From: Macrostomum lignano
Taxonomy: Eukaryota
DNA: 64,000 nt
Assembly (NCBI GenBank): GCA_002269645.1
Contig: NIVC01000023.1
Location: 1,116,001-1,180,000 of the forward strand
Direction: 5' to 3'
Shown here: one piece after another, positions 4,058 to 64,000 of the stretch
Position numbering within the stretch: position 1 is the stretch's first letter
Layout: each line of letters starts with the position of its first letter
Translations under genes and position numbers: made by a program
Notes under the pieces: model-generated
Told to the model about the DNA's origin: nothing
Database searches by the model: none
The model's input: the letters and a program-made list of their open reading frames with translations, nothing else

Positions 4058-4118
4058 TATGTTGCTGCATTGTGTGCGTGAATAGGTTCAGTAGATGAAC
4101 TTGCCTTTCCGAAAACTA

Positions 4119-4757: not shown

Positions 4758-4780
4758 GGTACATCCCACATCCCTTTAAA

Positions 4781-7380: not shown

Positions 7381-7385
7381 TGCAG

Positions 7386-21571: not shown

Positions 21572-21572
21572 T

Positions 21573-31573: not shown

Positions 31574-42243
<10,670 letters not shown>

Positions 42244-43370: not shown

Positions 43371-45781
43371 TGTTTATAGCAGCGAATACCAAACATCCCA
43401 TTCTGTTGCGATGCCGGCCCTCGAAAGCCAAACGTCATAGGCGTTTTTCAGCATTCTTTTTTTTTCTTATGTGCCTGTTTTCTTCTGCGCCTCTACATGT
43501 CTGGGCGGTTTCTGCGTCCCATCGGGGGCGCGCCCGTGCGGTCGTCCACCGGGATGGGCCGGTGAGCCGTCCGTCGGCTGGCTGCATGCACTCTGCAGCG
43601 CGGACACATTTTGCATCGGTTTCGCCTCCTCAATTGCGTCGCACCGGTGGTGTCTCCCGTGTGCTTAATTCTCCTGTTATTTTCATTAGCCCATCTGCGT
43701 ATTACTTATTATTCTCACTCTACTGTGATTTGTGAATTGATTTAAATATATAAACTCTCAGCACGCGTGCATCGACATCGTTCATTATAAATAATCGATC
43801 TAAATTCGTCACAACTCATTATATAGTTACAACTCGTAGTATCCGCATTTGTGTACTTCTTTTTTGTGAACCTATCAAAAGAATAAATAATTTAGGCTTT
43901 GTTCTACTTCTACTATTAGTAATGCGTAAATTATACCAACTTTGTTATTTATTCTAAATTTTATTTGGTATAAACTGGGATAAAAGTTGACCTCGCATAA
44001 TATATATCATATATATAGGTAGACTATCGAGAAAAGAAAGACAAGAAGACAATAAGACTGAGACAAATGGACTAAATTTCTCTGTGTTAGATTTGCTGTC
44101 CTCAGCTTCCGTAAATCAATAATGAGCGAATGCCGGAACGAAAATAATCAATTGCTAGCACATTTAAACAAAGAAAGCAAAAAATAAAATATTAACAACT
44201 AGGGGGTTCTTTTATTTAAAGCTAGTTATAATTTAACGGATTATAATCCAACAGTAAAAAATATGCTGCAAAGAAGCATTCAAACAATAGTTTTCATCGC
44301 AAAAGTTTGACTTCGTATCTACGACCTCGTTTAAACTTTTCAACCACGCTATCAGAAAAGAAACTACGAGCTATAAGTAATTGTCAGTTTGTTTTATACG
44401 TTTCTGTCTTCAAAAAAGGGTTCAATGGACACTAAATGTTTTGACATTTTCTTTTAACAGAATTCAAAAGAAGCCGAATTATATGTCCTCAGTATTTAGC
44501 TGGCTATACATACATATTGAATCGCATGTTTTAATGCAAGCGCAATGAATGCTTTTTACGTACACAGTTAATTATAAACTGGTTGTCTGTTTCTCAAAAA
44601 AGCTTTGTCTTAATATTTTTCTTTCTTGAAACCATTTATTTATACTTGTTCTATAAACCCCAGAGCATATTAGAACTTTTCAAAAATAATGCACATCTAG
44701 TAAAGCAAGGCGGATTTAAACATTTTTATTGACAATCTACAGTTTAAGTTTAAAATGAAATTAAGTTGTGTAGATCATCATTTATTTTTGGTAAAAAACT
44801 CTAAATAGAGTTTTTAATTCTCTTTTCTAGTGTCGTCAATAGTATATCTTTATTTAACTAAGAAGCTTGAAAATCTAAAAAAGTGTTATTTAATTTTATT
44901 ATAAAATATAGACCTATAATACCCAGCTGGCCACCTGGCCTATGGAAGATAAACGAAAAAAATTTAAACGAAACTTAATATAAAGGCCATGAAGTAGAAA
45001 ATGAGTAATCACTAGTAAAAAACGTTTTTACTAACCTAAAATTGCGTTTCTCATTTGTGATGCTACAAATGTTGAGGTCATGGAAAGTTGAATTCTTAAG
45101 CTACATGAATGCCTATGTAATTTGTATTTTTTGTACTTTCAGTCTATAAAGCATGAGTGTGATTGTTTCGAAGAACAAGTTGTAGCTTAAGACGAATAAC
45201 AAGAACAAGTTGTAGCTACTTAATTTATAATGTGTCCAGATATATCTAGCTTTTATATATAGTCCAAGCCTAAAAGATATAGTCCTCACGGACAGCTAAA
45301 ATCCGATGATGCATCATTCGTACATCGTGCAGATTTTCACAGGTTTTCAACTTTAATAAACACTAAATTGAAAAAAATATTCCACTTAGAAGTACTGAGC
45401 TTTAAAGTTTGAGGACAGATCGTTGGGAACCTGGTCAAAAATATATCTGTTGCTCTCTAAAACGGATTTTGCAAAAATTCGCTTTGTTACTTCACGTTAG
45501 CTACGAGCGTAGGGTTTTAACCATAGACAAACTCAAATTCATTAAAAATCTAGACAGTCTGGAGGGCCGAAGGCATTTTTAGCAGCGCGAAAACTGGCCT
45601 CCAGCGAAATTCACACGATATGCTAATGCAAATTCCTTCTGCGCCCAATTCCGGAATAATCAGTGAGAGTATTTTATAGAGTTTTCCCACGGTAAATTTT
45701 TGCGACTAACTTGAATTGCTCGTTAACAAAAATGTTTGGAAAATCTAAGCTTTGCTCAATGGATGTCTGAAAATTTCAGTC

Positions 45782-48700
45782 ATGGATGCTCATTTCGCTA
45801 GCTTGGACTTGAAGTCCCAGACAAACGACAGTGACAATGAACTTTTAAAATACTATGACCAGCACTTCCCGGCTGCGAATCTTACCCAGAAAGACGTAGA
45901 AAATGTTCTGCGAGCAATCTGCGACTGCATGGCCAAGGGGCCGGGTTTTTGGCCGAAAAGACATTCTCCCGGATACTATTGTGTGCTGAGAACGATCGTG
46001 CATATGCGGGATGCAGTGTAAGACACCTGTGGCATATGCTGGTTGAGTGAAACACATGGAATAGTAGAGTGAGAAACCTGGAATAGTAGAGTGAGATGCC
46101 TGGAAAAGTAGAGTGAGACACCTGGAATAGTAGAGTGAGATGCCTGGAAAAGTAGAGTGAGACACCTGGAATAGTAGAGTGAGACACCTGGAATAGTAGA
46201 GTGAGATACCTGGGATAGTAGAGTGAGATACCTGGAATAGTACAGTGAGATGCCTGGAATAGTAGAGTGAGATACCCACCAGGAATAGTAGAGTAAGATA
46301 TATGGGATAGTAGAGTGAGACGCCTGGAATAGTAGAGTGAGACACTTGGAATAGTAGAGTGAGATACCTAGCTGGAATAGTAGAGTGAGATACCTAGCTG
46401 GAATGGTAGAGTGAGATACCTAGCTGGAATAGTAGAGTGAGATACCTAGCTGGAATGGTAGAGTGAGATACCTAGCTGGAATAGTAGAGTGAGATACCTG
46501 GAATAGTAAAGTGAGACACCTGGAATAGTAGAGTGAGATACCTACCTGGAATAGTAGAGTGAGATACCTACCTGGAATAGTAGAGTGAGATACCTGGAAT
46601 AGTAAAGTGAGACACCTGGAATAGTAGAGTGAGATAGAGTGTAGACTGAGACACGTAGGACAGTTTTTAGAGTCGAGTGGAGATACCTGGAATGGCTGGC
46701 TGAGTGAGATAACAAGTATCGAGACAGAGTAAGAGTCAGAACCTCAGACAAACACTTATAAGTCTCAGACGAACAAAACCTCGCCACTCTGACGCCATGC
46801 AGAAAAAATCACACGGAGTGGCTGCCAAACCTTCGGCAAGCGGTCTGGTCTGCCTACTGCGCCTGTTTCGCACACGGCGCCAGCGGATTCACAACGGATG
46901 TGTGGTCCGATTTGCGTCAGACGTTTAAAGATTTGACGTTTAATGTGAGCGATAATTTGCACTGCGTATGCGATTTTTTGACAGACTACTGTCAGTAGGT
47001 CAAAACAGAAACGCTTTTTATTGTTGCGCAAAATTTCAGGAGCCCAACTTTGCTAAGCAGCTTTTGCAGACGATTCCTAAAGCTAGAATTGAAGCCGAAG
47101 CCGATGAAAGAAGCTTGACAGTCTCGCAGATGCGGAGCCACACTGTTTCAACCATGCTGGACAATCTCAGGTCAGTAAGCTCAAAATAAGCTCGAAACTT
47201 GATACATGTAATTCTCAGCACTAGAGACATCTGCGAAGGTTTAACAGTAGGAATGCCAAGCCATTTTTCCGCCCGACGAACTGTAAATATCTTTGATGTC
47301 GCTGACCAATCTTTAATAGACTAGCTGAGACTAACTAGCCAATGATGTCTAGCAGTTCAGGTTTTGCCCATTGTTAAAGCTTGGTCAGCGACATCAAATA
47401 AATTTGCAAGCTTAGGGTGTACATATAGTCACCTGCATGCGGTGCCTGTTGAAGGTCCAAGTTCTTCACGGCGCTCAAGATTTTTTGAATATCTCGACGG
47501 ACAGGAGGCGGCTGGCGACTTGATTCTTGTTTGAGAAGGTGTGCAACAAGAAGTTAGTCTGTGCTCTTCAATTTCGTGTGCCTATGTTGCTTCGTTACGG
47601 CGCAGCAAAAATTGTCAGGGGGTTTTACTGTTAACCTGAAAAAAATGCAGATACTGAAAATAGAAGAAACTCTCAAGGCAGATCGGACGATCTCGTCTTT
47701 CTTTTGAACTTTTTTGGCTCCTGGAAGCCAGTGCAGAGCACAGATCACTTGGTTGTTGATGCTTGCTTCGAATAACTTTGGGCAATGTTAGATATTCGTA
47801 ACTTGGGATTAGAATCTACGAGCCGTAACTAACTCAACTAACTCATCCCTTATGCAATTTTCAGTGATGAAGTTGCATTAGACAACACAGAGGAAATCCA
47901 GGCGCTCTACCTGGACTACGTCAGTCACGGCGGGGCGGAGTACGACGAGATTCGATCCTATTGGGCCTTCGCCCTCGGCTGCCTGGGCAGGAAGCTGGAG
48001 AGCAGCCAATCGGCTCCTATGAGTTCGTCAATTGTTCATGTAAATAAATGACAATTGTTTGCTTAAGGTTGATTTAGGGAACTAATTAATTTAGTGCTTA
48101 GAAAAATGTCTTTATCTTGCTCATACATTTTCGGGTCTCTAGTGGAATTTACACGATATTTGTGCGCATCGTCCTTTTACTCTAAGTGGTCAGAGGCTTG
48201 ATAACAGACTCAGGTTCTAATAGTCCTAATTATTTTATAGTCAACAAAGTATACTCCTCTGGCATACTGTATAATCTACGAAATTTCAGTTCTACGCCAA
48301 AGACGACGCCTTCATGCGACGGCTACTCGGAGCCTTGGATTCGGCAGCCAGTTCGGACCTGTCAGATGATGCCGCTGATAAACTCGACAGAGTCGTCACG
48401 AACTTCGGTTCGGCGCTTTGGTGAGCTAAAAAGCCAGAATTTGAACTGGTTCCAAAAGACGCTGTATCACAGTACGCTGTAAGAGTTGGGCCCGGCACTG
48501 CACTCTTAAGGCCGGTTCACGTTGCCCTCAGTAGCTCAGCGGCCAAAGATGGCTCAAGTCAATACACAGTTGGTTCGGATAGCACTTATGCGAGTAAAAA
48601 GTAAAGACATTTGCCATGGTATACAGTAAAATTTTATTGAGAAGGCGATGGCGCTAATCGTGAGCGGGTCGTACGCTCGTCCGTTAGGAGACCCTTTTTG

Positions 48701-51700
48701 AGTTAAGTTTAGCTACGAGTTCAATCACGCCCCTATTCAGAACCAATGAGATGCATGTAGACTGAGAAGTGCAGTTTTTATTATAAATTTTGTGCATTCG
48801 GCACATGACTCATGTTCAATTGTTCTATGACACACAGCGCCACAAAGGACGTCGATTTCAAGTACCTGTTCAACGATGCCTACCAAGCATGCTTCAAGCT
48901 GTTGAGCAACAAAAAGACATCGAAGTCAGGCGGTTTTTTTCTGCGACGCCTCACTGAATTGGCAATTAGCAAGAAATATACACTGGCGGTAAGTACGCAA
49001 AGCCGAGGATTCAGTAGGAACTCATACGGTACTTTGAAGATTTGGCTAGGATTGCAACATGACTCAGATCATCTGAAGAACAGGCAGTCCAGACAGTAAC
49101 TCGCCGATAAAAAAACCCGCCTACCCAAGAGACTAAGATCGCAGGGGGCTTAGTTTTCTTCCTTGCTTCTTTGCTCGTTTTCTTTTTAAAATCAAAGCGA
49201 CAGTCGAACTGCACTCAGTGAGGAAACAAGAATCAGTCACGTAGTAGTGTGGCCACTAACCCTGACTTTTCTATTGGCCTGCAGGGCCCACTGCCTTGCG
49301 ATTTATGCCAGTTTCAAAGAATTAACTCCAAAATACTCGTACTAGACTAAGCACCTACTCTTTTATTAGTAGTTCGTCTGCGCATTGTCATTTAAATTTT
49401 GGCAGCTCAAGTGTCTTTTCCTTCAGGGTCTGCGGCTTCAGAGCGTATGGGTTGAGAATTAACAACACAGTTATATGACCAATAATAAGGAACACATTTG
49501 ATACAAGTAAACACAAGACGGACGAAACTCAGCCTAGGTGGCAGGCCCAATCTGGCTCAGCCAATGAGGAGCAGTAAGGAGAGAGGTAAAAGTCAGACGG
49601 ACGAAACTCAGCGAGCCTAAGGGCAGGCCCAATCTGGCTCAGCCAATGAGAGAGCAGTAAGGAGAGAGGTAAAAGTCAGACGGACGAAACTTAGCCTAGG
49701 GGGCAGGCCCAATCTGGCTCAGCCAATGAGAGAGCAGTAAGGAGAGAGGTAAAAGTCAGACGGACGAAACTTAGCCTAGGGGGCAGGCCCAATCTGGCTC
49801 AGCCAATGAGAGAGCAGTAAGGAGAGAGGTAAAAGTCAGACGGACGAAACTTAGCCTAGGGGGCAGGCCCAATCTAACTCAGCCAATGAGAGAGCAGTAA
49901 GGAGAGAGGTGAAAGTCAGACACAAGCGGGCAAGAGGAAAGCCAAAAATTTGTCGGCTTGGCTGGGGGCTGCTGGGGCGCTGCCCTTCTCTCTCTTGCTC
50001 GCTATGCACACGCACTGGATTCGGGTTTTTAAGTTTTCCTGCAATCGTCACTCTTAAATAAGTTATCTATTGAAATAACTTCAAGGCTGAGACAGTCTGG
50101 AGTCAGCAAAACAGGCTAAGTTAATGGGTCTGCTTTTAGAAAACCAGAGGCGATGATTGAATATCGAGCAAACTGTAATAAGTTTTCAACTCTGCTCTTA
50201 TAAATATTCAATAATGCGTTTTTAAGCTATTAGAACACTTTTATTGAAGCTCGAGTCTTCAATGGGCAATAAAACTCGTTTTAACTTTCAGGACACGTCA
50301 AGCCTTAGCGAGTTGGTTTCGGGCAAAGCTAACATCGACCTCATCATGCAACGTCCCAATAAATCAGATGATGAAGAATTGACACCGGAGGACGAGATAC
50401 TCAAGAAGGCTCGATACGAGCTATTCCAAAAACTGTTGCCAAGTGCTGCAACTACAGTTGAGGACATGGCCTCGTGCATGCCGTTGTATGTAAAGCTGCT
50501 GAGCGTTTCCTTTAAGCAGTTTGTCGAAAGCATTGAAAAAATGTACTTTGACAATGCTAAGCTGAAGCTCATTCAGTTGAACGCTGCAGTGAGTTTGATA
50601 ATATTACCTTTTTTGCATCCTTGTCGTTTTGTTCCCGAGGTTCGACCCCAAGTTTTAGTGTGTAGCAGCGTTAAATGAGGTTTACTACTGAACTATACTG
50701 AAAGTAAAAATACTTTTTTGTACTCAACAAAAAAACTTTTTCAGAAATTTCAATCGGCTTTCATTTTGTTCATCGAAGAGTGCGCCAATGCTCTGACAAA
50801 ACTAGACGAGTCTGTGCCCGAGGAGAAGCAGGGTGATCCATTGATATACGGACCGGTGCAAAAGCTGGCTTCCATTCTGGAGAAAATGATTGAAAAGCTT
50901 TAGTAAGTGATGGGTGCGATAGTACGAGTAGTGTTTCTTATGTCAGTGAGGTTGATAGTTAAGCCCTATCATGTTGAGAGTGTGTGAGAGTCGATTCGAT
51001 TTGCTTGATTACAAGCCACGCTTCAACTTGACTGACCCTACTGGAGTCCTTGATATAGTTATCTGCTTTGCGGTTTGTATAGCATCTTGGAAAGTATTAT
51101 TCGATATTCGAAGTATCGATTTATTGTTTTAGCAAATCGCCCGGCAAGAAGATCGTGCATGAGAAAGTTACCCAGGCAAAGCTGTTTGAAGTCATGCAGA
51201 AGATGGTGTCCAGTCGAAGTCTTTGCCTTCTCGGTGCAATACGCGGCTTTGACAAGGAAATTTTCAACTGGCCGGCGCTGCAAGATCGTTTTCAAGAAAA
51301 TCTGGATATGCTTGAGGCATTTCTGAATGATAACTTCACTACTATTGAGAGCGTGCACTACGGTATCGGGTTCGCTGTGATCCCGGTAGACTTCATCTTG
51401 TTTATGATGTGAGAAGCATTAAAGCCATGTTTTATCATCTGTTTTCCACACCCTAAGTAAAGGTGGGGTATTGACAGATGAAGTGCTCTACATTGTCAAC
51501 ACAGGAGCGATAGAACTGGCATTCCTCACTGCGGATTTCCCCTAGAGGTAGCAATGCCTAGCGAAGCAGCCATGACCTGAGAGGGCTATGGTTACCGCCC
51601 TGACATCCCAGCGGTAGAGTCCAAGCAAGGGCCCGAACAGGACAGGACCGGTTTTTGAGTCCCTACACGTAGTCAAGTGGTCTTAAACGCTGAGTCAGGA

Positions 51701-54700
51701 ACTCATTACATATACTTTAAGTACTACAAGAGATTCCATTCAAAATCTGTTTACTACTCTTTAGTAGGATACCTTCCTAACTTACTATACCACTCTTCTA
51801 CTTCAAATTTCTGGCAACAAAGCTTTTTACAGCTTCAGAAATACCATATTCTGCCCACCGTAGCAAAAACAAGCCACCGACTGTGTGCAACAGCATGGAA
51901 AGTCTTCGCAAGATTATCGAAACCTGCTTAACTAGCGACATCATGGTGACAATGATGAGCGGGTCGGACATTCTGTCTGCAGAGGGTCTCGTCTTGATCA
52001 ATCTACTCAGCAACCTGATGTCGGCAACTAGCGTTCAGACGGTAAGTTTTCATTTGTCTTTACGTTCCGTTCCTTGATGTGCGCCAGACCCCCCCCCCCA
52101 AATATGACGAAATCTCTAATATGTAAACTCGCCAACCAACTGCTATGCAAATTCCTATACAATTAAGGCCCAAAACTTTATACACCGCTGCCAAATTGTC
52201 AGATGCTGCCTATCAACAAAGAGCTTTACCCGCTGTACGTCAGCATGTGCCGGAAAACCACTGAGTATCCCGAGTCTGGCACAAGCGGAATAATGATTGG
52301 CCTCACAACCTGCCTCGGCTACAGCCCGGATACCGTTTTCCAGTTTCTGCCGCATTTTCCGCTTCTGTTGGAATTTCTACAGGAGCAGAAGACTGCGGGC
52401 TCTCAGATGTTTGGAGCATTGTTTGCGGGACTGTTGCGTGAGTAAATGCACAAAAATGTTTTTTGACTCGAAGAACTAAATCTAAATCTAAACGATAATA
52501 GTCATTCCTTAAAAAATCTTTTGCGAGCAGAATGCCTGCAACTGTCAGCGAAAACGGAGATTCCGGATCAACTAGCCAGCCGGGTTGACCAGCTAATCAG
52601 CTTAAGCAAGGGAGAAGACACTGTGCAAGTACAGATGGTTCAGTTCATCGGGACTGTCTGCAAACTTAACAGCGCCAAATCTGCCGAAAAGATGCGAGAT
52701 TATCTGCTAAGCTTTCTGCAAGGTCCATACGCCGCTATTGCGCTCAGTGGCCTCGCTTCGCTAGCAGAAAATCAACCTCAGGTGATGTCAGGAGCCTTAG
52801 ACCAGCTGGTGACGACAGCGATATCTAACATCGATCTTGTAGCACTCATAATTACTACCATTGATAAAGGAAAGTTTGATGCACCAAAACTAATGACGTC
52901 CATGTGTGAGATTGTAAATCATCACCTTGCTCAAAACTCAGAGGCTAACAAGCTCACCAGCTGTCTCGCGCTGATGCGACGCATCGGAGTCGACAGTCCG
53001 CAGCTGCTGGCCGAGCGAGAGTCCGACATCAAGCGCTGGAAGTCGAGCCCGGCTCTGCTCGACGCCTGCAACCACCTGCTCGATGTGATCGCAAACCGCT
53101 CGCTCGTCGGTCTGGAAGGCCAAATCACCGACCAGAGCGACAAGATCGGCGGACTCGAGCGAGACTTGAGCGACACCGGACACAAAGTCGACGAGGTGTC
53201 GGGTCGCGTGGACGAGACCAGAGACGAGCTCGGACAAGTTCGGGGCAGAGTGGACGCGACGGAGGGCCGCGTGGATGAGCTAAATATCACTGTGGGCGTG
53301 CTGGACGAGAAGGTCAAGGAAATCGATCTCAAGGTGAGTCGCTGAGAAGCCTTCAGCAGGCTCTAATGGCAGATAAAGAAGCCAACTCGCAGTTACAACT
53401 CCACTCCAGACTCTGAACGCGGCTCCTGCGTGGTCTCGCGAAGTGTCCCGCCTGATGAACCCGGAGTCCGACACTGACTGGCGACTGCTGGCTCAGAGAC
53501 TGAACTTCTCGGCCGACGACATTCGAGCATGGGCCACAACTGCGGACCCGTGCATGAGTATGCTGGCCGAGTTCTACACAAACAACCGAGCAGCGGAAGC
53601 GTCCAAGGCTGTGCTGCAGCAGCTCAAGGAGATGAACCGTCTTGACGCAGCGGCCATTGTCGAGGCGTCCATTCTGAACGCAGGTGAGTACGAGCTATCT
53701 GAGCTTGATGCTCAGAGCTGAATCGAGACCACTCGTTGCTCAATTGAATATCTGAAATCGTATCGGAGCTAGCTGCTCGCCGTTTCCATTCAGAGTCCGC
53801 TGCCTCCGACGACCCGGTCGAGTTCACGGCGCCTCGCAACGTCTTCCTCAGCTATCAGTGGGGCCACCAGGCCGAGGTGAAGATGCTCAAGCAGCACCTG
53901 GAGAAGGCCGGGTATCGCTGCTGGATGGACATTGGCCAGATGGGAGGCGGAGACAAGCTGTTCTCGGCCATCGATGCTGGAATTCGGTCAGCCAAGGTGG
54001 TCATTGCGTGCGTGACGGACAAGTACTCCAAGTCGGACAACTGCAGACGAGAGGTGAGCGTGTTTATCCTGAGTTCATCCTTGCAGTAGAGTAGCTACAT
54101 GTGTGCTCACACATACATGTGCCGCTCTCATCTCCAATTTGCAGCTGAACCTGTCCGTGTCGCTGAACAAGCACCTGATCCCGGTGCAGCTCGAGCGAGT
54201 CTCTTGGCCTCCGGAAGGAGCCATGGGACCTCTGCTGACCGAGTACCTGTACATCCGCTTGTTCGATCGGAGCGGCAAGGCGTCCGGCTCCGGCGGAGTG
54301 TTCTGGCCGCCGGACAAGTTCATGGAGCTGCTGGTTCAGATCCGGTTGGCCGTGGCGCCCGACTACGACTCGGTGAGTGCAGAGTACGCGAACTGGTGGC
54401 AGCCGCCCAGCGCCGACGAAACCATCGTGCTGCCCGACCGGAAGGAGGCCTCCAAATCGGACGCCAAGACCAAGACGAGCTCGGCCGACAGCCGCGACGC
54501 TCCGCCTGCCGCTCCGCAGGTGTTCCTGTCCTACCAGTGGTCCAAGCAATCAGAAGTGAAGGCGCTCTACTCTCGACTCTGCAGTCTTGGCTTCACCTGC
54601 TGGATGGACATCTTCCAGATGGGAGGCGGCGACTCGCTCTACGAGAAGATCGACCGCGGAGTTCGCGGCTGCAGCGTCGTTGTCGCCTTCGTCACTCCCA

Positions 54701-55437
54701 AGTACGCCGCCTCGCCCAACTGCAGGCGAGAGGTAAGCCTCGCCGACGCCATCCGCAAGCCGATCGTTCCGGTGATGCTGGAGAAGATGGCGTGGCCGCC
54801 CGAGGGTCCGATGTCGATGCCGCTCACGCAGCTCATCTACGTGCAGATGTACAAGGACGCGGACGACCAGCTGACGTGGCGCGGCGAAAAGTTCGAGGAG
54901 CTTCACGCCAGACTGCGGCAGATTGTGCCGGCGCCTGCGGCAGAGGCTGCAGCTGGATGGCAGGCGAAGAGCGGAGCTGAAGCGGCGGCTGGTGGGCAGG
55001 CGAAGAGCGGAGCTGAGGCGGCGGCTGGTGGGCAGGCGAAGAGCGGAGCTGAAGCGGCGGCTGGTGGGCAGGCGAAGAGCGGAGCTGAGGCTGCGGCTGG
55101 TGGGCAGGCGAAGAGCGGAGCTGAGGCGGCGGCTGGTGGGCAGGCGAAGAGCGGAGCTGAAGCGGCGGCTGGTGGGCAGGCGAAGAGCGGAGCTGAGGCG
55201 GCGGCTGGTGGGCAGGCGAGGAGCGGAGCTGAGGCTGCGGCTGGTGGGCAGGCGAGGAGCGGAGCTGAGGCTGCGGCTGGTGGGCAGGCGAAGAGCGGAG
55301 CTGAGGCTGCAGAGGCTGCAGAGGCTGCAGAGGTTGGCGGGCCTGTGAGCCTGCCTCCGCTGAGCGAGAAGAAGCGGGAGAAGCTGGCGAGGGTGCAGAG
55401 CGCCGCCGGTCGCTCGAAGACGTGCAACGTTCTGTGA
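45782..55437 (+). CDS. Large helical-solenoid / coiled-coil / Death / TIR / TIR / CaaX protein, ~1579 aa, 15 exons
   Basis: Exons 45782-46017, 46803-46944, 47040-47170, 47865-48039, 48290-48420, 48838-48988, 50292-50588, 50745-50902, 51133-51408, 51864-52041, 52203-52437, 52531-53333, 53410-53683, 53794-54053 and 54145-55437. All are GT-AG and phase-compatible (4740 nt), and exon limits are mirrored in the paralog. Death domain DWRLLAQRLNFS..DI...ML.EF...L..L.EMNR.DAA.IV. Two TIR_2-type domains VFLSYQW...CWMDI.QMGGGD.L...ID.G.R....V.....KY..S.NCRRE. Ends CNVL-stop. Confidence 0.85.
46060..46635. repeat. 22-bp intronic minisatellite (TGGAATAGTAGAGTGAGACACC)
   Basis: Direct reading; intron 1 of the TIR gene. 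Confidence 0.92.
49515..49925. repeat. ~80-bp tandem repeat, ~5 copies, two CCAAT motifs per unit
   Basis: Unit GACGGACGAAACTTAGCCTAGGGGGCAGGCCCAATCTGGCTCAGCCAATGAGAGAGCAGTAAGGAGAGAGGTAAAAGTCA; intron 6. Confidence 0.92.
51518..51656 (+). ncRNA. Putative structured ncRNA or short Pol III-type element, copy A (family unknown; 5' end undefined)
   Basis: Shares a ~60-nt core with 59581-59641 (GGCATTCCTCACTGCGG..GAGGTAGC.ATGC.TAGCGAAGCAGCCATGAC) and CAAGGGC..GAAC; ends in TTTTT; lies in intron 9. Confidence 0.5.
54939..55305 (+). repeat. Coding 36-bp minisatellite, 10 copies, encoding AEAAAGGQAKSG
   Basis: In frame between TIR2 and the C-terminal polybasic/CaaX tail. Confidence 0.93.
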
Positions 55438-56768: not shown

Positions 56769-57076
56769 TGGAATTGACAGTTATTTCATACTATCTTATT
56801 GCGTATCTATCTTCTGCGTAAATACAATATTTAAATTGACAAATAAACTACAGCGTATAACTGTTTTATCTTGGGAGATTCGTTTGATTCATTTTCACTA
56901 GCTGCTAGCTAAATTTAAATCGAATTGGCTACATCGAATTCTGTGAGGTCGTTTAAAACGCACAGAACAGGATTTCATGCAGAACTGTTGAGTATTACTT
57001 TAAAATATAAAGATTACACGTGAATTTACAGCCTCGCATTTCGAACAAGTTCCAGAACAAATTAGCTACGAGCGTA

Positions 57077-60000
57077 ATGGACTCCTATTTTAAATCGCTA
57101 GACCTGCTAACTAGGGAAGAGCACGTGGACAATAAGATAATGGACGAACTCAAAACGAGATTTCCTTCGGAGTCGGTGTCGCAGTACGATGTCAAGAATC
57201 TTCTACTGGCAATGACAGAACGATTCTCCAGTCAAGACAAGTCGCCTCCAGATCGGCATTCTCCTGGTCACTACGTAGTGACCCGTTTTGTTGTCCACAT
57301 TCGCGACGTTATGTAAGCTACCGGTCAGACCGGGTATGAGGGTTTAAAGCGTACCACACCCCCATTTCTTTTCTCTGCCCTGTGTCTTTCTTTTGGGCAG
57401 CGGCTCGTGATTGGCTGGCCAGTGGGGTGGGGTTTCGTGGCTGCCTGTCCGTCCCCCTGTCCTTCCCCTCTTTCTCTATCGCTGTTTATATCGCTTCCTT
57501 CCCCCAACATTTCTTTCAGTGGACTTGCGGGGACGGGGAACAGCTTGAACGCTATATTAATGTATAATTGATATATATAAACTTGAACGCTCTGTAAATA
57601 GCTCGTGTAATAATAATAATAAGAGTTGCTTGTGCAGCTGCCTTGGGGATGCAACCACATGCTGCATATACTTGGCTTTAACTTCTTTACCTACAGCTAC
57701 AGGAACAAAAGCTGGCAGAAGCAGCTGCGCGGCGTCATCTGGGACACGTTTTGCACTTTAATGGTCGGGCCGCGGCTAAGCGGGTTCTTAGTCGACTTAA
57801 TGAGCGAGCTGACTGTGCTGAGCAAACACGATGAGGACAAGTTTGAGGTGGGTGAAACTTCTCATGCTGCTGGAATGAAATCGGGAGCCTACATGCATCA
57901 TGTTCCCTCCCCCCAATCACATCCGAATTAAACATCGTCAAGTAAGCATCGGTAAAAGAAGTAAATCGTTTATTCGAAACTTGAAAGCTAATTAGTTAAT
58001 AATAAAGCTACGAATAGGAAGGTTGTTTCTGTAGCATTAGCAGGCGCAGCAGAAAGTTACGAAAGATTAGGAAGGAAGTTTAGTGAATCGAAGCGATCGA
58101 TGCTCACGCGCAAGCAATAAAGTTCACAATTTTAATTCATTATTAATGTTCATTAGTAAGAAGTTGCTACATTTGCATGATCATCGTTATACATGTAAAC
58201 AAAGAGATTAATTAGGCATTTAGGTAAATTCGAATACATTCGCAATGTTGTAACTTCTCGTCAGACTTATATTTTTGTTCTTTCTTTGCGTCTTTGGTCA
58301 TTGACATTGTCATTAACGTTAACGATGAATTTGTCGTTAACTCACAAAATTATTAACGCAAATTTGTTAATCCGTTAGTGCAAAAAATCTTAACGGCAGT
58401 CCGTTAACGTTAATAAAAAATCTTAACACCTATTAACGCTTATTAACTGATTAACGCTTATTAACGGACTGGTGCCCAACACTGATAATAGTAATTGATT
58501 ACACCTGCCCTAATGGCCAGACGTGCAACCGACAGCTCAGCCGCAGCTATTGCGCGGCGCATCTGAAGGCTGCGTACGGCTGTTCAGTCCAAGGACTGGG
58601 GGGTCGCCACACACACCCTCAATTACCCCAGCTAATGCTGGTACTAAATTTTACAGCTGGGTGAACTGAAGCAATGCAGAGTTATAAGTGTCATGATCAA
58701 GGACACGAATTGTTCCAGTTGGATCAGGAATCGAACCCCCGACCTTCAAGTCACGAGTCCGACGCTCTGACCACAAGGCTACAACCCCTGCTAAATTAGC
58801 AGAAGTTGATGTTAACATTGACACTATAGAAACGTGTCTTTTATTTCACGTGTGATAAAACCTGTAAGAATTGATCTTTTTACTGACATTGCGAGGGTAA
58901 AATTCAGTGCGTACTACTCCTCAAGCTGAAGCTGATTTCTAACTCACCCGACAGGACCCAGACTGCGCCCGTAAGCTGCTGCTGGCCATTAAAGACGTTA
59001 GAATCGAAGAGCCGAATACAGCTGAGGCAGAAGACGAGAAGGACAGAGCTTACGCGGTGTCCCGACTGCGCGACCTGACCGTCACATTTCTGCTGTCTAA
59101 GTTCAGGTAGCTAATCGAACTGATTAGGATTGATTCTTTATCTCAATGCTTAACCACTGATAAGAAAAAGGGTGCGTCACTTTCAAATTGTGGAAATTTA
59201 TTTCTTTTTGAGCTGCTATGTGTGCTAGATATGCCTATTGTCAGTATATCTACTTTGGCTGTGGAAAAACCTTATTGGAGACTTGCGGAGTTCTTCCCGT
59301 TGCTCTAACATTTTCTTTACCGATTTCATGCAATGGATTCTACGGTATATAAGCAGATTAAATACGTTTTCGAGTGCTGCACGGTTTTCGGGCGTTGCCG
59401 ACCGTTCCTTTAACCCCTAACGACCACGGTCAGCTAGTGCTGCGGTGCCGCGCCCGGAGATCTGGTAGTGCCGGTGTCCGCAGCGGTACCTTAGGTACCG
59501 GACGAGCTGGTAAATTCTCGGGACTAAAAAAGTCAGAGAAAGATCCGGGTTCGGACCGAGGCAGAGTGAGAGGCATAATGGGCATTCCTCACTGCGGGTT
59601 TCATCCTTGGAGGTAGCGATGCTTAGCGAAGCAGCCATGACGTCGTGCGCGGGCGACGACTTCGACTGGCTGGCCATGTCATTCGGTCAGAGGCCCGCTG
59701 CCCTGAGCCGCTACACGAAGTGCTGCTGCAGGGACCGCGCAGGCGATGCCAAGGGCGAACGGCGAGATATCCTGACCAGCTTTTGACTGATGCTGGCGCC
59801 CCGGACTAAGCTGGGGGGGGGGTTGGGGGTGACTTTTTAAGGGCTATGGCCCAAAGACTTTTCCCCCTTTCTGGCCACTGAGTGGTCGGCGGGTGAAATT
59901 TTGTTATTGTTGTTGTTGTTGAAAACCCGAAGTGACCACATTGCAATAGTAATTTTATGATTTCCTGGTGACTATAAAACGCCTCGCTTACAAATATGCA

Positions 60001-63000
60001 TTTTTTGCAGTGAAAAAATCTATTTCGAAAAACTGGTCGATACAGTGAAGAGCTTCTATCTGAATCTATTGGAGACATGCGACTCATCTACTGCCAAAAC
60101 TGAGCAGTACAGAGAAAGCGTTCTGGCAGCGTTGCATCGAAAATTGAGTCAAGCTGCTCACAGGCCTCTTTGTAACTCTATAGTTCACGTGAGTGAATGA
60201 AGTTGTTGCTCTTGCTAAGCTACTTGCTAAGTAAGTTGCTTTGTTATAATCTGCCTCATATGGTATCACATTCTGCGGGTTTAATGAGACTTTTTAACGA
60301 ACGAAAATCACAATGAAAATATTTCCTCATCTTCTTCTCGTCTCTCCTGTGTGCCTCATTGTAACGGCCTTTGTCTGCAGCCATTTTAAGAAGTGTTTCC
60401 ATTCCCATTTCGCTTCACTGGTTGCCTTGTCAAAAGTCAAAATTTAACTCTTAAACAATGACCGGTTATATAGCCTAAAACAAGGTCACTGCCGTGATCT
60501 TCCCGAATTACTTTGCACATATACGTATTCCAGATGTACGCCAATGACCAAGCATTCATGCGATCGTTGTTAGGCGTCCTTGACAATCTGGCGAACCGTT
60601 ACAGAGGTCGCGCCTTGTCAAAGCAGACAGCAGGCACTGTGGGCATGGCTATGCTCAAGCTGGGCTCATCAGTTCAGTAAGAAAGGGTTTGGACTTCAAT
60701 TCAACTCTGCTTTACTGCGGCTAAATGTGACGGCTTCAAGAAGAAAACATTAATCCTCATTGAACTGTTGCAGAGAGGTGACAAATGTAGACTTTACCTA
60801 TCTAATTGACGATGCACATCGCATTTGCCTGTGCATTTTGGCAAGCAATACAGACAATGAGAAGCTGATTGATCGAGGAAAATATCTACTGGTTCGATTG
60901 TACGATTTTGCTGTCAGAGCTAAACTGAGCTTGAAGGTGAGAGTGAAGATTTTTTATTGATTGCGTTAGTTCCTTAAAGGGTGTCAGTAAAAAGTACTTA
61001 ACAATCATAGTAGCTTAATACGTTACCTCTGAGTTTCTCTGATCTTTGGAAGTAGCATGTGTGGTTATTTTTATTCGTAAATATCATCTTTATGACTGAC
61101 ACACACATTCATAGCTAATTTTGATGTTGGAATTTATTCTTCTGTTATTTACTGCCAAAGCCCCCCCCCCAACCTGACTCTGCTTTGGCCTTTCAGAGCA
61201 TTCCAACCATATACGAGACTTTAGCTGATCAAAGCAGCATCGGATTCTTGCTCGTCAGGCCACCTCCACCGGATGAGAGCGGCAAGCCGGCTGCAGTTCC
61301 GCAGCTACTGAAGGACATTCGCAGCCAGTTGTACAGCAACCTGATGCCCGAGCTTGTGACCAGCGTTGAAGAGCTGAGCGAATGCATGCCCGCCTACCTG
61401 AACCTAATGCGCATTTCTAGCACGGAGTTCGACTTGTACTTTAGGAAAATGTACATCGACAGCGACAGGATGAAACTAATTCAGCGAAATGCTGAGGTGC
61501 TGGATAAGTTTTTTTGTATTAAAGATCTCTTGATAAGACTAGCGCTCCGTTGTAGTCTGTAGCTAAGACTGAAGTGTAATGTACTGTACTGTACTGACAC
61601 GACTTGTCAAAAATAGAAATCACCTGATTGTCACGGACTGTTTCCACACCAGACTTCAATGTTTTAGCTGACTAAGACTTACAGAATTCATGGCTGGGTT
61701 TTGATATACATTTGGTATTACATCGGTTCTCATAGCCTATTAATAAGCTTGCAACACTCGTGTGATGGAGAGAATCATGCAGCGGACGAACGTTTATCCA
61801 AAGATCAATTTTCAAGGTTAAGCAAAAAGGGGTCTATATAGTACAGTGTAAAGGCTCTTTTATAAAAGTCTGTAATCGCCCGAAGTCTTTTAGTTTGATG
61901 ACCGTGTCAATGAGGTTAATAGCTAAAACTAGTGGTAGCACAAACCACAGAAAATTCAGTGCAAAGCATCTCAAAGCGCCATGACGCTTAATATATAGAG
62001 CCCTATTAAGTAATACTATTGCTTTTAATTCTCATAGATTCGTTCATCAGCAAGAGGAGTCTGCAAGTCTGCAAACCGGTAAACGCAGACCTTTGTCAGA
62101 ATTTTTCATAGCTAGATTGAGTGTGTGTAAAGATTTTCCTTTTAAACTTTTCAAGCGACTAGCCGGTAGCGCGCCCCGGTTTTACTTTTGCTTTATACTT
62201 GCATTGAAATTTTCAGTTACTTTGATTTCAACTTCGTTGCACTGTTGATCCATGTAGTATTATCGCGCATGCATTTCTAAATAAATATTAACGTAATGGA
62301 CTCAAGGTAAGCCAAACCCAACCATTTCAGACATTCCGACCGGCGTTATTGCTTTTCATCGACGCGTTCGTGGCCGAAGTGTTGTCAGTCGAAGAGGCGA
62401 AACGAGCCACATCCGGTCAGGCCTTCGATCCCAGAGCGGGCGATCTTTTCAACAAGCTGATCATGAACATCTTGTGAGTGACCTTCACTCTCTTCTTTGC
62501 TCATGAGATGTTTTTGGCGCCGTCTACCTGTGCTTTGTAGCTTGAAGTTGAGGGTTCGAAACCTTAATTTTACGTTGCATCAAAAGCGGTCAACATCAAT
62601 TCAGCGATCAAATCGCACGACTGCTGTACGAAAGGAAGCCGATATACTCAAACAGACCGTGTCCTTTCAAAAATTGGTCTCTACTTGATGGCTGTGTAAC
62701 GACGCTTATTGAGCACACTAAGCCTTTATATTCAGGAAGCCAATATATCCACTAGATTCATAATTTGTAGGTAGTTATAGGTAATTGAAATCTGTTAACT
62801 CGATCGGTAGCTAAGATAATCGTAATAAAATCCTCCATATTGATTCGCGTTTTTTCTAGCCAATCGCCCGGAAAGGCGATGCTCCGGCAGATACCAATGC
62901 AGCTCAAGCTGCTCGAAATTCTGCTTCTAGCCGTTCGCAGCCTAAGCTTAACTATTCTCGTGAGCGGCTGGCGGTGCGACATGTTTAACTGGCCGGACCT

Positions 63001-64000
63001 GACTGACCAGCTACCTGCTGTCCTTGACGCAATGGTTCAGTGTGTGCGACAGCCAGTTATTACACTCGACACTTTGAACTATGGAAGCATGTTTCTTAGA
63101 ATACCGCTAGATTTCATCGACAATGTGGTGTAAGATTGGCGCATTCATGTTTTAAATTTTATTTCAGCCTAGTTGGCAAAAATTGGCATCTCTGGAAGTA
63201 GAAAACAGATTTACCGTATGGTCTGACCGCAAGTCACATAGAAAGGAAGTATGCACGACCTATGCTCTGCTGTAGTGCTGGACTTAGGCCTAACAAAGAA
63301 TTACTTGGAAGCTTCCAAGAGGTAATTTGATCAAGACGCTAATTTTCATTGACAGGAGGACCTCGCCAGAAACCATTTGCAATCTGCTTGAGAAATTTCG
63401 TCCACTTCTGGAAACCTGCCTTGAAAATGAATTGGCTACAGTCGACGTAACTGGCAGTGACACCTTGACTCTGGAAGGCCAAATACTGCACTCTGTTGTT
63501 GTTAGTCTAACCGCTGGATTCCAACAAGCTGCGAAGGTAAAAATAACTTCATTCAGCCCATGCTACGAAGCATTTTACTACAAAAGTTACGTTCGTAAAG
63601 CTAAAAAATTAGATTGAAAATTCGCACCTGCAGCTAGTGACAATCAACAAGGACCTATTTCCTCTGTACACCAAAGCCGTGGACAGGTTCTTCAGCAGCT
63701 CACGGGGCGACATGGCTACCGGAGTTTTGCTGGGGCTTAACAATTGCCTTGGCAACAGCTCAGATACCGTGTTTGCTTTTCTGCTGCATCTACCTCTTCT
63801 AGTGGATACGTATAAAAGAACGAAGAGAGAGCAACCGGAAATTTACACCGGCTTGGCACCTGGATTGATATGTAAAATTGAAATAGCATCTCTTTACAGA
63901 CACTGTGTAAAATATGAGTATTTCAGAGCATCTCTCCGTACATTCCAGACACTCTGCAAAGCAGTTCACGCAACGAGGTGCCAGACACATTGGCGCAACA
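57077..64000 (+). CDS. Tandem paralog of the 45782-55437 gene (N-terminal solenoid part; continues past the window end)
   Basis: Exons 57077-57312, 57697-57847, 58955-59106, 60011-60188, 60534-60676, 60774-60936, 61197-61496, 62331-62473, 62860-63129, 63356-63536, 63634-63871 and 63949-end. Same intron phases as the upstream gene, with matching motifs (MDSYFKSLDL/MDAHFASLDL, RHSPG.Y, SIVH, VDF.YL..DA, KMY.D....KLIQ.NA, FNWP.L.D, INK.L.PLY). Confidence 0.85.
58501..58788 (-). mobile_element. SINE family B, longer copy
   Basis: Reverse complement: GGGGTTGTAGCCTTGTGGTCAGAGCG...GGTTCGATTCC...GTGTCCTTGATCATGACACTT...CACCCAGCTGTAAAAT; tail shared with 40965-41203; in paralog intron 2. Confidence 0.85.
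59428..59785 (+). ncRNA. Putative structured ncRNA, copy B (~360 nt, GC-rich, terminal stem GGTCAG/CTGACC, T5 end)
   Basis: GC-rich island in the AT-rich intron 3, with many hairpins, the core shared with 51518-51576 and a B-box-like GGTTCGGACC. Confidence 0.55.

What the first reader, a model, noticed from the sequence alone, without database searches (positions are those of the whole stretch)
45782..55437. Large solenoid-coiled coil-Death-TIR-TIR protein with intact catalytic glutamates and a prenylation motif: candidate new innate-immune or NAD+-signalling module
Seen: a 15-exon gene of ~1579 aa. It has roughly 900 aa of helical repeat-like sequence, a heptad coiled coil, a Death domain, two TIR domains, a repetitive linker and a C-terminal ...KKREKLAR..GRSKTCNVL. 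Both TIRs carry S.NCRRE. Established: the Glu in this helix corresponds to the catalytic Glu of NADase TIRs (SARM1, plant NLR TIRs, bacterial Thoeris ThsB), and the VFLSY/WMD/GGGD style is TIR_2-like rather than TLR-like. Inference: this could be a SARM1-like (solenoid-autoinhibited, oligomerising) or MyD88-like (Death-TIR) hybrid, anchored at the membrane and able to cleave NAD+ or make cyclic ADPR signals. I do not recognise this architecture as a named family.
Basis: partly seen in the sequence, partly recalled or inferred. Interest (0 to 1): 0.85.

Follow-up and report, generated by a model that had tools for sequence, protein, structure and literature searches.

The report
Flatworm solenoid-Death-twin-TIR gene (ecTIR-DC 6)
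The gene is real as described (15 exons, 1579 aa), but it is the Macrostomum lignano member of an invertebrate protein family that is already catalogued and has never been tested for function; that it cleaves NAD+ and is lipid-anchored remains a reasonable prediction.

Summary
There is a 15-exon, all GT-AG gene at 45782-55437 (+) encoding 1579 aa: helical N-terminus, coiled coil, Death domain, two TIR_2 domains that each carry S.NCRRE, a 12-aa x10 repeat tail, and a C-terminal CNVL.

The window comes from the flatworm Macrostomum lignano (contig NIVC01000023.1). The model rests on three supports. A GenBank product from the second genomic copy has the same junctions (BOX15_Mlig018443g1, 97% identical). 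Exons 1-14 have no indels between the two copies, and dN/dS is 0.17. A diverged tandem paralog at 57077-64000 keeps all 11 intron positions and phases.

The architecture is not unnamed. It is "ecTIR-DC family 6" (Gerdol 2017), found in molluscs, annelids, rotifers, amphioxus and urchins, and never tested for function.

Four things are newly supported here:
- Both glutamates align with the catalytic Glu of SARM1 (E642) and of an active coelacanth TIR.
- The closest solved structures are NADase-type TIRs and full-length SARM1.
- A CaaX box is present in 37 of 43 relatives.
- The family also occurs in animals that lack Toll-like receptors.

NADase activity and prenylation are inferred, not shown. 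Verdict: a new member of a known kind, of moderate interest.

The parts
45782..55437 (+). Whole coding region: 15 exons, 1579 aa plus stop
   Evidence: Independent reconstruction. 97.0% identical, with the same junctions, to GenBank BOX15_Mlig018443g1 from the second genomic copy.
45782..46017 (+). Exon 1 (aa 1-78), start codon
   Evidence: The ATG aligns with the paralog's ATG at 57077 (MDAHFASLDL / MDSYFKSLDL). An acceptor-like TTTCAG lies 2 nt upstream. UniProt A0A1I8I651 starts at the same Met.
46803..46944 (+). Exon 2
   Evidence: GT-AG junctions, phase conserved in the paralog; no indels against the other copy.
47040..47170 (+). Exon 3
47865..48039 (+). Exon 4
48290..48420 (+). Exon 5
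48838..48988 (+). Exon 6
   Evidence: The donor GCG|GTAAGT sits where similarity to the paralog ends. The paralog has AAG|GTGAGA at the same codon position.
50292..50588 (+). Exon 7
   Evidence: Acceptor TTTCAG|GAC. The paralog has an acceptor at the same position and phase.
50745..50902 (+). Exon 8; profile homology to the family's solenoid becomes confident from here
   Evidence: Junctions. hhalign of target + paralog profile against the family N-terminus: probability 90%, E 1.6e-6.
51133..51408 (+). Exon 9
51864..52041 (+). Exon 10
52203..52437 (+). Exon 11
52531..53333 (+). Exon 12: end of the helical solenoid plus the coiled coil. The acceptor is GCAG|AATGCC; a second in-frame acceptor lies 18 nt downstream at 52549.
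   Evidence: A family N-terminal HMM hits this exon at E 1.5e-24. The annotated product reads ...GLLQCLQLSAKTEIP. AF2 pLDDT is about 90 for the helical hairpins.
53103..53333 (+). Coiled-coil segment (aa 895-971)
   Evidence: AF2 models one 77-residue helix, at low pLDDT as a monomer. Weak Pfam hits to coiled-coil families.
53410..53683 (+). Exon 13: Death domain (aa ~980-1065, ending in the first codons of exon 14)
   Evidence: Pfam Death E 2.2e-8. Six-helix bundle in AF2. Best solved relative by sequence is the p75NTR death domain, E 6.5e-5; MyD88 scores 0.12.
53794..54053 (+). Exon 14: first half of TIR1 (TIR1 starts at about 53841)
   Evidence: Pfam TIR_2 E 3e-19.
54051..54053 (+). TIR1 glutamate codon (E1149), the last codon of exon 14
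   Evidence: SDNCRRE. Invariant in 40 aligned sequences. Aligns with SARM1 E642.
54145..55437 (+). Exon 15: rest of TIR1 (to about 54345), linker, TIR2 (about 54520-54924), repeat tail, CaaX, stop
   Evidence: Pfam TIR_2 E 3.7e-24. AF2 TIR folds with pLDDT 80-93.
54730..54732 (+). TIR2 glutamate codon (E1345)
   Evidence: SPNCRRE. At least 90% conserved. Aligns with the Glu of Cat1 and of the active Latimeria TIR.
54943..55333 (+). Low-complexity tether: 36-bp x10.1 repeat (AEAAAGGQAKSG), then 9-bp x3.4 repeat
   Evidence: Tandem Repeats Finder. Copy number differs between the two genomic copies (51-aa gap). The equivalent tail in the amphioxus homologue is disordered (pLDDT ~26).
55366..55434 (+). 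Basic stretch and CaaX box (EKKREKLARVQSAAGRSKT-CNVL; CNVL = 55423-55434)
   Evidence: 37 of 43 relatives end in C-x-[ILV]-[LIMS]. Five of the six without it end before or shortly after the TIR domains, consistent with cut-short models.
57077..64000 (+). Tandem paralog (exons 1'-12', 733 aa so far), running off the window. Not part of the gene; it supports the gene model.
   Evidence: 33% protein identity. All 11 intron positions and phases are conserved.

Best explanation
SHOWN: This is a single, intact, selectively constrained protein-coding gene of the free-living flatworm Macrostomum lignano. It is the flatworm member of the invertebrate family catalogued as ecTIR-DC 6. Its layout is: alpha-solenoid (ARM/HEAT-like), coiled coil, Death domain, TIR, TIR, disordered tether, basic patch plus CaaX. 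It sits next to a diverged tandem paralog and has a second, ~97% identical copy elsewhere in this neopolyploid genome.

INFERRED mechanism:
- The protein is geranylgeranylated on Cys1576 (CaaX with X = Leu). It hangs from the cytosolic face of a membrane on a ~170-aa flexible tail.
- The solenoid holds it in an off state or binds a ligand or partner, as the ARM domain does in SARM1.
- The coiled coil and Death domain drive oligomerisation.
- Clustering brings the TIR domains together, so that one or both use the alphaC glutamate (E1149, E1345) to cleave NAD+. The outcome is either a cADPR-type signal or NAD+ depletion.
- Because M. lignano and bdelloid rotifers have no Toll-like receptors, the protein most likely acts on its own as a sensor or effector, not as a TLR adaptor.

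The confidence given (0.55) is for the whole statement. The gene model and family assignment alone are about 0.95; the enzymatic, membrane-tethered mechanism alone is about 0.45.
For: Gene and family (strong):
- The 15-exon open frame and per-exon coding scores.
- Exon versus intron conservation between the two copies; dN/dS 0.09-0.22 in every part.
- GenBank and UniProt products spanning the N-terminus to the CaaX box.
- A paralog with identical intron phases.
- 43 relatives with Death+TIR+TIR in molluscs, annelid, rotifers, amphioxus and urchin at 36-58% identity.
- The family's name and definition in PMC6836662.

Mechanism (indirect):
- TIR_2 scores far above TIR in Pfam.
- The nearest solved sequences are PdTIR, AbTir, a bacterial 'TIR domain protein' (7uxr), Cat1 and SARM1. 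These are bacterial TIRs and SARM1, several of them known NADases, with the Glu aligned.
- E1149 is invariant and E1345 is at least 90% conserved across 40 sequences.
- The top Foldseek hits are full-length human SARM1 and C. elegans TIR-1 (E 1e-6 to 1e-5). Next come SPARTA, SARM1, AbTir and plant TIR domains, TM 0.7-0.8 on the target.
- The amphioxus homologue's first 500 aa fold as a confident solenoid (pLDDT ~90). It resembles SARM1, CAND1, importins and beta-catenin.
- Both TIRs are 32% identical (E 3e-22 and 3e-16) to the Latimeria TIR H2ZXV5. That TIR shares LSYQW / WMD / S.NC..E and depleted NAD+ in E. coli. A herring relative made cADPR.
- CaaX is present in 37 of 43 relatives, with a basic stretch before it.
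- TLRs are absent from M. lignano and Rotaria (PMC8609888).
Against: - No biochemical, localisation or expression data exist for any member.
- The Trp found four residues before the catalytic Glu in SARM1, plant, AbTir, Cat1 and PdTIR (WxxxE) is an invariant Asn here.
- In the one large screen, only 12 of 61 Glu-bearing animal TIRs were active.
- Four tested TIRs with an NCxxE motif (rotifer, chytrid, two Emiliania) gave no product.
- No member of this family was in that screen.
- The alphaC Glu also occurs in some TLR TIRs, so it is necessary but not diagnostic.
- Foldseek TM-scores to full-length SARM1 are low (0.14-0.24). They reflect shared domain types, not a shared arrangement.
- Bivalve members are co-expressed with TLRs in gills, which also fits an adaptor role.
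- Autoinhibition by the solenoid is pure analogy.
- aa 1-430 have no detectable relatives outside M. lignano.
Confidence: 0.55

Rival explanations
1. It is a non-enzymatic scaffold. This would be a MyD88-like adaptor whose Death domain recruits death-domain kinases or caspase-type partners. Its two TIRs would only bind other TIR proteins, and the conserved Glu would serve structure or binding.
For: - Death+TIR is the MyD88 combination.
- The family is gill-enriched and co-expressed with TLRs in Loripes, and its authors proposed an adaptor role.
- Most Glu-bearing animal TIRs gave no product in E. coli.
- The WxxxE tryptophan is missing.
Against: - M. lignano and bdelloid rotifers keep the family but have no TLRs.
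- The TIRs are of the TIR_2/SARM1/bacterial type, not the MyD88 type. MyD88 has Phe at the catalytic position (Table S2 excerpt).
- The Death domain is closer to that of p75NTR than to that of MyD88.
- Glu is invariant in TIR1 and at least 90% conserved in TIR2 across six phyla.
- The nearest tested TIRs are active.
Confidence: 0.3
2. The locus holds two genes. An orphan helical protein (exons 1-6, or 1-11) would lie next to a shorter Death-TIR-TIR gene, perhaps as a trans-spliced operon, and the long product would be an annotation artefact.
For: - Relatives in other phyla have 580-740 aa before the Death domain, against ~975 here.
- aa 1-430 have no relatives elsewhere.
- An in-frame ATG lies 30 nt upstream of exon 7.
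- No transcript reads could be examined here.
Against: - GenBank and UniProt products of the same species join aa 1/13 through to the TIRs.
- The exon 6 donor and exon 7 acceptor are strong, phase-compatible, and conserved at the same codons in a paralog only 33% identical. Intron 6 is only ~260 bp there.
- The ATG upstream of exon 7 is absent in the paralog.
- Exons 1-6 and 7-11 diverge at the same rate between paralogs, 35% against 32% identity.
Confidence: 0.03
3. It is a decaying duplicate in a neopolyploid genome, an intact-looking but functionless copy.
For: - There are at least four related loci: two copies each of two paralogs.
- The repeat tail varies in length between copies.
Against: - No frameshift or stop occurs in 4737 coding bases.
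- Exons 1-14 have no indels, while the introns have 1261 gap columns.
- dN/dS is 0.17.
- All splice sites are canonical.
Confidence: 0.02

Closest known systems
ecTIR-DC family 6 (Gerdol et al. 2017, Dev Comp Immunol 70:145; described in PMC6836662 for a Loripes orbiculatus gill transcript and mentioned in PMC5549309 for Mytilisepta)
   Same: - Long ARM-like N-terminus, central Death domain, two C-terminal TIR domains, no signal peptide or transmembrane segment, invertebrates only.
- 36-58% identity over coiled coil, Death, TIR and TIR.
- Same S.NC..E motifs and the same CaaX ending.
   Different: - The flatworm protein has ~230-390 more N-terminal residues.
- Its solenoid is so diverged that only a profile detects the relationship.
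- It comes from an animal with no TLRs.
- I could not read the Gerdol paper itself, so the family number rests on the quotation in PMC6836662.
SARM1 / C. elegans TIR-1 / Drosophila dSarm
   Same: - N-terminal helical solenoid, then an oligomerisation module, then a C-terminal TIR of the same broad type.
- The Glu aligns with E642.
- These are the top structural matches for both models.
   Different: - No SAM domains; a coiled coil plus Death domain takes their place.
- Two TIRs instead of one.
- CaaX tail instead of an N-terminal mitochondrial signal.
- Asn instead of Trp at position -4.
- About 20% TIR identity.
- It is not an orthologue.
MyD88
   Same: Death domain followed by TIR; a cytosolic signalling protein.
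   Different: - About 300 aa with one TIR, no solenoid, no coiled coil, no CaaX.
- MyD88 has Phe, not Glu, at the catalytic position.
- The Death domain matches MyD88 only at E 0.12.
TIR-only proteins of fish tested by Hurieva et al. 2026 (bioRxiv 10.64898/2026.04.20.719644): Latimeria H2ZXV5, herring A0A6P8EVF3
   Same: - The closest experimentally tested TIR domains: 32% identity.
- They share LSYQW, WMD and S.[NS]C..E with an aligned Glu.
- Both are catalytically active (NAD+ depletion; cADPR).
   Different: - Short proteins of 236-296 aa with a single TIR.
- No solenoid, Death domain, second TIR or CaaX.
- The BB loop lacks the family's invariant GQMGGGD.

Membership tests
ecTIR-DC family 6 | Two TIR domains at the C-terminal end | tested here: met
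   Pfam TIR_2 with two stretches, 158.6 bits. Two TIR folds in AF2.
ecTIR-DC family 6 | Central Death domain directly upstream of the TIRs | tested here: met
   Pfam Death, 34.5 bits against a cut-off of 22.6. Six-helix bundle at aa 980-1065.
ecTIR-DC family 6 | Long N-terminal region with ARM-repeat-like helices | tested here: inconclusive
   - Helical hairpins are modelled at pLDDT ~90 for aa ~740-890.
- Profile homology to the family solenoid covers aa ~430-703.
- The amphioxus homologue's solenoid is confident and ARM/HEAT-like.
- There is no Pfam ARM/HEAT hit, and aa 1-430 could not be modelled.
ecTIR-DC family 6 | Cytosolic: no signal peptide, no transmembrane segment | tested here: met
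   - The N-terminus is hydrophilic.
- The two most hydrophobic 19-mers (KD 1.9) are not membrane-spanning candidates. One lies inside the helical repeats that AF2 models confidently. The other is less hydrophobic in the paralog.
- This was a crude scan only.
ecTIR-DC family 6 | Sequence orthology to bivalve members | tested here: met
   E 1e-187 to 1e-105 against Sinanodonta, Ostrea, Crassostrea, Pecten and Mytilus proteins with the same domain order.
SARM1 family | Tandem SAM domains between ARM and TIR | tested here: not met
   No SAM hit in Pfam. A coiled coil plus Death domain occupies that place.
SARM1 family | Catalytic Glu in TIR helix alphaC | tested here: met
   phmmer aligns query RE with SARM1 KE(642). 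E642 is confirmed in WVHKE. The Glu lies in predicted helix 462-473 of the model.
SARM1 family | NMN/NAD+ allosteric pocket in the ARM domain | not testable with these tools
   No residue-level superposition is available, and the solenoids are not alignable by sequence.
MyD88 family | Small Death + single TIR adaptor with a MyD88-type TIR | tested here: not met
   1579 aa and two TIR_2 domains. The nearest solved TIRs are bacterial and SARM1, not MyD88. MyD88 carries Phe at the Glu position.
Catalytic (NAD+-cleaving) TIR domains | Conserved alphaC glutamate | tested here: met
   E1149 invariant, E1345 at least 90% conserved. Aligned to the Glu of SARM1, PdTIR, Cat1 and Latimeria TIR.
Catalytic (NAD+-cleaving) TIR domains | Trp four residues before the Glu (WxxxE), as in SARM1, AbTir, Cat1, PdTIR and plant TIRs | tested here: not met
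   Asn is invariant at that place in both TIRs. The active Latimeria TIR also has Asn there, so this feature is common but not obligatory.
Catalytic (NAD+-cleaving) TIR domains | Measured Glu-dependent NAD+ turnover | not testable with these tools
   Needs an enzyme assay. No family member was among the 154 TIRs of Hurieva et al. Table S4.
CaaX-prenylated proteins | Cys at position -4 from the C-terminus, with aliphatic a2 and X determining the lipid | tested here: met
   CNVL. 37 of 43 relatives end in CaaX, mostly with X = L, which from general knowledge directs geranylgeranylation.
CaaX-prenylated proteins | Actual lipid attachment and membrane association | not testable with these tools
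   Needs metabolic labelling or localisation of a C1576S mutant.

The most novel reading that the evidence does not exclude
The family would be a lipid-anchored, TLR-independent counterpart of SARM1 and plant TIR-NLRs, conserved across invertebrates.
- A solenoid sensor releases a coiled-coil/Death oligomeriser.
- The oligomeriser assembles twin TIRs on a membrane.
- One or both TIRs then cleave NAD+ through an unusual NCxxE active site, producing a cADPR-type second messenger or collapsing local NAD+.
- This would give flatworms and rotifers, which lost Toll-like receptors, a self-contained TIR immune or cell-death switch.
Probability: 0.3. Interest if true: 0.7.

Novelty: new member of a known kind. 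Interest (0 to 1): 0.4.

Why it matters
If the prediction holds, this would be a second animal lineage of regulated TIR enzymes besides SARM1. It would have a different oligomeriser, two catalytic domains and a membrane anchor, and it would occur in animals without TLRs. That would separate 'TIR signalling' from 'Toll signalling' in animals.

It would also extend the recent finding that many animal TIRs are enzymes (bioRxiv 10.64898/2026.04.20.719644) to a large multidomain protein.

M. lignano can be made transgenic (PMC5730564), so localisation, E-to-Q and C-to-S alleles and infection assays are practical.

If the prediction fails, the gene is still a well-supported annotation of a conserved but unstudied adaptor.

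Tried and rejected
N-terminal homology searches that found nothing or too little:
- A simple HMM of the relatives' N-termini against the six-frame window hit only exon 12.
- phmmer of aa 1-710 against the 43 relatives gave nothing.
- A word-indexed search with aa 1-703 gave no hit.
- Pfam at E up to 10 on both paralogs' N-termini gave nothing useful.
- An exhaustive phmmer with aa 705-900 against 1.84 billion representatives found only the same-species protein and two short fragments.
- Only the two-sequence profile (target + paralog) reached the family solenoid.

The N-terminal 700 aa of the window's own protein could therefore not be folded.
- I folded the C-terminal 734 aa and a full-length amphioxus homologue instead. 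The first 22 residues of the 734-aa query were intron read-through and should be ignored.
- A look-up of the last-exon ORF as a called gene failed.

Corrections to my own model:
- My first acceptor for exon 12 (52549) was replaced by 52531 after comparison with the annotated product.
- A start at the ATG 30 nt upstream of exon 7, or at Met342, was considered. It would give a length typical of the family. I rejected it on the paralog and annotation evidence.

Other:
- No further copy lies upstream in the window.
- The Gerdol 2017 paper is not held.

Full report
WHAT IS THERE

The window is metazoan DNA with short GT-AG introns. I used open-frame segments, a small dynamic-programming exon chainer and direct reading of each junction. 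The result is 15 exons on the + strand from ATG 45782 to the stop at 55435-55437.

The correction moved the exon 12 acceptor to 52531 from a second in-frame AG 18 nt downstream.

Pfam finds one Death domain (34.5 bits) and two TIR_2 domains (E 3e-19 and 3.7e-24; 158.6 bits jointly). The classical TIR model scores far lower. SDNCRRE (54033-54053) and SPNCRRE (54712-54732) are present. The tail is a 36-bp x10.1 tandem repeat. The protein ends EKKREKLARVQSAAGRSKTCNVL.

IS IT REAL?

Five independent lines say yes.

(i) Coding scores. Codon-usage log-odds were trained on other genes of the window. They are positive in frame and negative out of frame for all 15 exons. Nearly all introns are negative in every frame; four short ones have one weakly positive frame.

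(ii) Source and second copy. A single-exon neighbour (RhoGEF-C1-SH2, 24374-26278) is found exactly on two contigs of assembly GCA_002269645.1. That assembly is Macrostomum lignano Mlig_3_7 (PMC5730564). The window is identical to NIVC01000023.1.

(iii) Comparison with the second copy, on NIVC01000073.1 and fetched as L003:
- Exons are 97.15% identical, with no indel column in exons 1-14.
- Introns are 93.1% identical, with 1261 gap columns.
- dN/dS is 0.17 overall: 0.22 for exons 1-6, 0.09 for exons 7-11, and 0.20 for the rest.

(iv) Annotated products. GenBank annotates that second copy as BOX15_Mlig018443g1 (partial, 1518 aa). UniProt holds A0A1I8I651 (1401 aa). Both run from the N-terminal exons through Death and the TIRs. 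They agree with my junctions at 97-98% identity.

(v) A tandem paralog starts at 57077 and runs off the window:
- Its first 12 exons give an open 733-aa frame that is 33% identical to the target.
- Its ATG sits at the same codon.
- All eleven intron positions and phases are conserved, including the exon 6/7 junction.

That last point disposes of the main doubt, namely that exons 1-6 might be a separate gene. Relatives in other phyla are about 230-390 aa shorter before the Death domain, and aa 1-430 have no detectable relatives elsewhere.

WHAT FAMILY?

A search with the C-terminal 734 aa returned 43 proteins, all unnamed or 'uncharacterized'. They have the same coiled coil-Death-TIR-TIR order, and most also have a 450-740 aa helical N-terminus. 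They come from bivalves, gastropods, an annelid, bdelloid rotifers, three amphioxus species and a sea urchin, at 36-58% identity.

The literature has a name for this. [quoted passage not shown] TIR domains'. [quoted passage not shown] 2017. The same family is listed as gill-enriched in Mytilisepta. No function has been tested.

It is catalogued, and this gene is already in public protein databases, but it is uncharacterised.

STRUCTURE

AlphaFold2 on the C-terminal 734 aa with a 40-sequence alignment gave mean pLDDT 77.7. The model shows:
- confident helical hairpins (pLDDT ~90);
- one 77-residue helix;
- a six-helix Death fold;
- two TIR folds;
- a disordered inter-TIR linker.

The first 22 residues of that query were intron read-through and should be ignored.

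A full-length amphioxus homologue folds with about 30 helices over its first 500 residues at pLDDT ~90. These are followed by the same modules and a disordered ~110-residue tail.

Foldseek against the PDB puts full-length human SARM1 and C. elegans TIR-1 on top for both models. After them come:
- for the TIRs: SPARTA, SARM1, AbTir, plant, Cat1 and Hydra TRR-2 TIR domains;
- for the solenoid: CAND1, karyopherins, SF3B1, beta-catenin and adaptins.

TM-scores to whole SARM1 are low (0.14-0.24). The likeness is one of parts and order, not of packing.

The flatworm solenoid itself is very diverged. A single-sequence exhaustive search with aa 705-900 finds only the same-species protein. A profile of target plus paralog aligns aa 275-701 to the family's N-terminal profile at 90% probability and E 1.6e-6, with confident columns from about aa 430.

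THE GLUTAMATES

By sequence:
- TIR1 aligns to SARM1 so that R-E1149 matches K-E642. It also aligns Glu-on-Glu to PdTIR and Cat1.
- TIR2 aligns its Glu to that of Cat1.
- SARM1 E642 is confirmed to be the Glu of WVHKE in Table S4 of Hurieva et al..
- E1149 is invariant and E1345 at least 90% conserved in 40 sequences. The BB-loop motif GQMGGGD and SYQW are similarly conserved.

It is an invariant Asn in this family.

A 2026 preprint (bioRxiv 10.64898/2026.04.20.719644) expressed 154 Glu-bearing eukaryotic TIRs in E. coli. Twelve of 61 animal TIRs were active, mostly making cADPR. No member of this family was tested, since no MGGGD sequence appears in Table S4.

The closest tested domains are informative:
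- A coelacanth TIR with LSYQW / VWMD / SRNCKKE depleted NAD+.
- A herring relative made cADPR.
- Both flatworm TIRs are 32% identical to the coelacanth domain, with NC..E aligned (E 3e-22 and 3e-16).
- Four other NCxxE TIRs (rotifer, chytrid, two Emiliania) gave no product in that assay.

The Asn therefore does not exclude catalysis, but activity cannot be assumed.

THE TAIL

Thirty-seven of 43 relatives end in Cys-x-[ILV]-[LIMS], usually after Lys/Ser-rich residues. Five of the six exceptions end before or shortly after the TIR domains, which suggests cut-short gene models. From general knowledge, X = Leu directs geranylgeranylation.

The preceding 110-170 residues are low-complexity. They are lineage-specific in sequence and repeat number, and disordered in the model. 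This fits a flexible tether to a membrane.

I found no paper in the held library that links CaaX to a TIR-Death protein. That is weak evidence that it has not been noted.

CONTEXT

Toll-like receptors are absent from M. lignano, other flatworms and Rotaria (PMC8609888). Yet the family is kept in both groups, duplicated in the flatworm, and under purifying selection. That argues against an obligate TLR-adaptor role.

The Death domain is closest in sequence to that of p75NTR (E 6.5e-5), not MyD88 (E 0.12).

VERDICT

The SARM1-like/MyD88-like hybrid reading, the TIR_2 type, the Glu correspondence and the CaaX motif all stand up. The claim of an unrecognised architecture does not.

I file the gene as a new (flatworm) member of a known, catalogued, functionally unstudied family.

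The most likely mechanism is a membrane-tethered protein whose twin TIRs cleave NAD+ when it oligomerises. That mechanism is inference. I put it at roughly even odds against a purely scaffolding role.

Noticed in passing
window 57077-64000 (+): Tandem paralog of the target gene: 12 exons so far, an open 733-aa frame, 33% identical, all intron positions and phases conserved. It runs off the window before its coiled coil, Death and TIR part. No product of it was found in the protein database, and no other gene is called within 10 kb of the target's copy on the second contig.
   Followed up: partly
L003 (NIVC01000073.1:847881-876748, reversed) vs window 40309-61234: Second, colinear copy of the whole region in this neopolyploid genome, 90-98% identical. 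The 80-bp x5 tandem repeat in intron 6 (49516-49921) and part of the 22-bp x25 repeat in intron 1 (46045-46636) are missing or shorter there.
   Followed up: partly
window 45774-45781 and 57048-57076: A strong acceptor-like site (TTTCAG) lies 2 nt before the target's ATG and about 21 nt before the paralog's ATG. This may be a spliced-leader trans-splice site or the end of a 5'-UTR intron.
   Followed up: no
window 52531 / 52549: Two in-frame acceptors 18 nt apart at the start of exon 12. The upstream one matches the annotated products. Using the downstream one would drop six residues (QCLQLSA to P).
   Followed up: partly
window 7380-17031 (+): Multi-exon phosphoribosylformylglycinamidine synthase gene (Pfam FGAR-AT_N, FGAR-AT_linker, AIRS_C, GATase_5). 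A proline-rich tandem-repeat stretch lies around 9036-10272.
   Followed up: partly
window 20846-21571 (+) and 28484-29302 (+): Two apparently single-exon secreted C-type lectin genes (Pfam Lectin_C) with N-terminal hydrophobic leaders.
   Followed up: partly
window 24374-26278 (+): Single-exon 634-aa RhoGEF-C1-SH2 (Vav-like) gene. It encodes an identical protein on both genomic copies although the flanks differ.
   Followed up: partly
window 31574-32674 (-): TMEM26-family gene (Pfam Tmem26, E 1.5e-57).
   Followed up: no
P0043 (1263 aa, Logan assembly): A distant relative with a different front end: GTPase (Roc/Ras) and COR-like domains, then Death and a single TIR of the same subtype. It still ends in a CaaX box (CTIL). 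The anchor seems to travel with the Death-TIR unit.
   Followed up: no
window 36537-38656, 34965-36058, 27066-27902, 21493-22623, 4088-4771: Many long tandem-repeat arrays, including a (GA)n-like run at 38421-38656, which produce long spurious ORFs on both strands.
   Followed up: no
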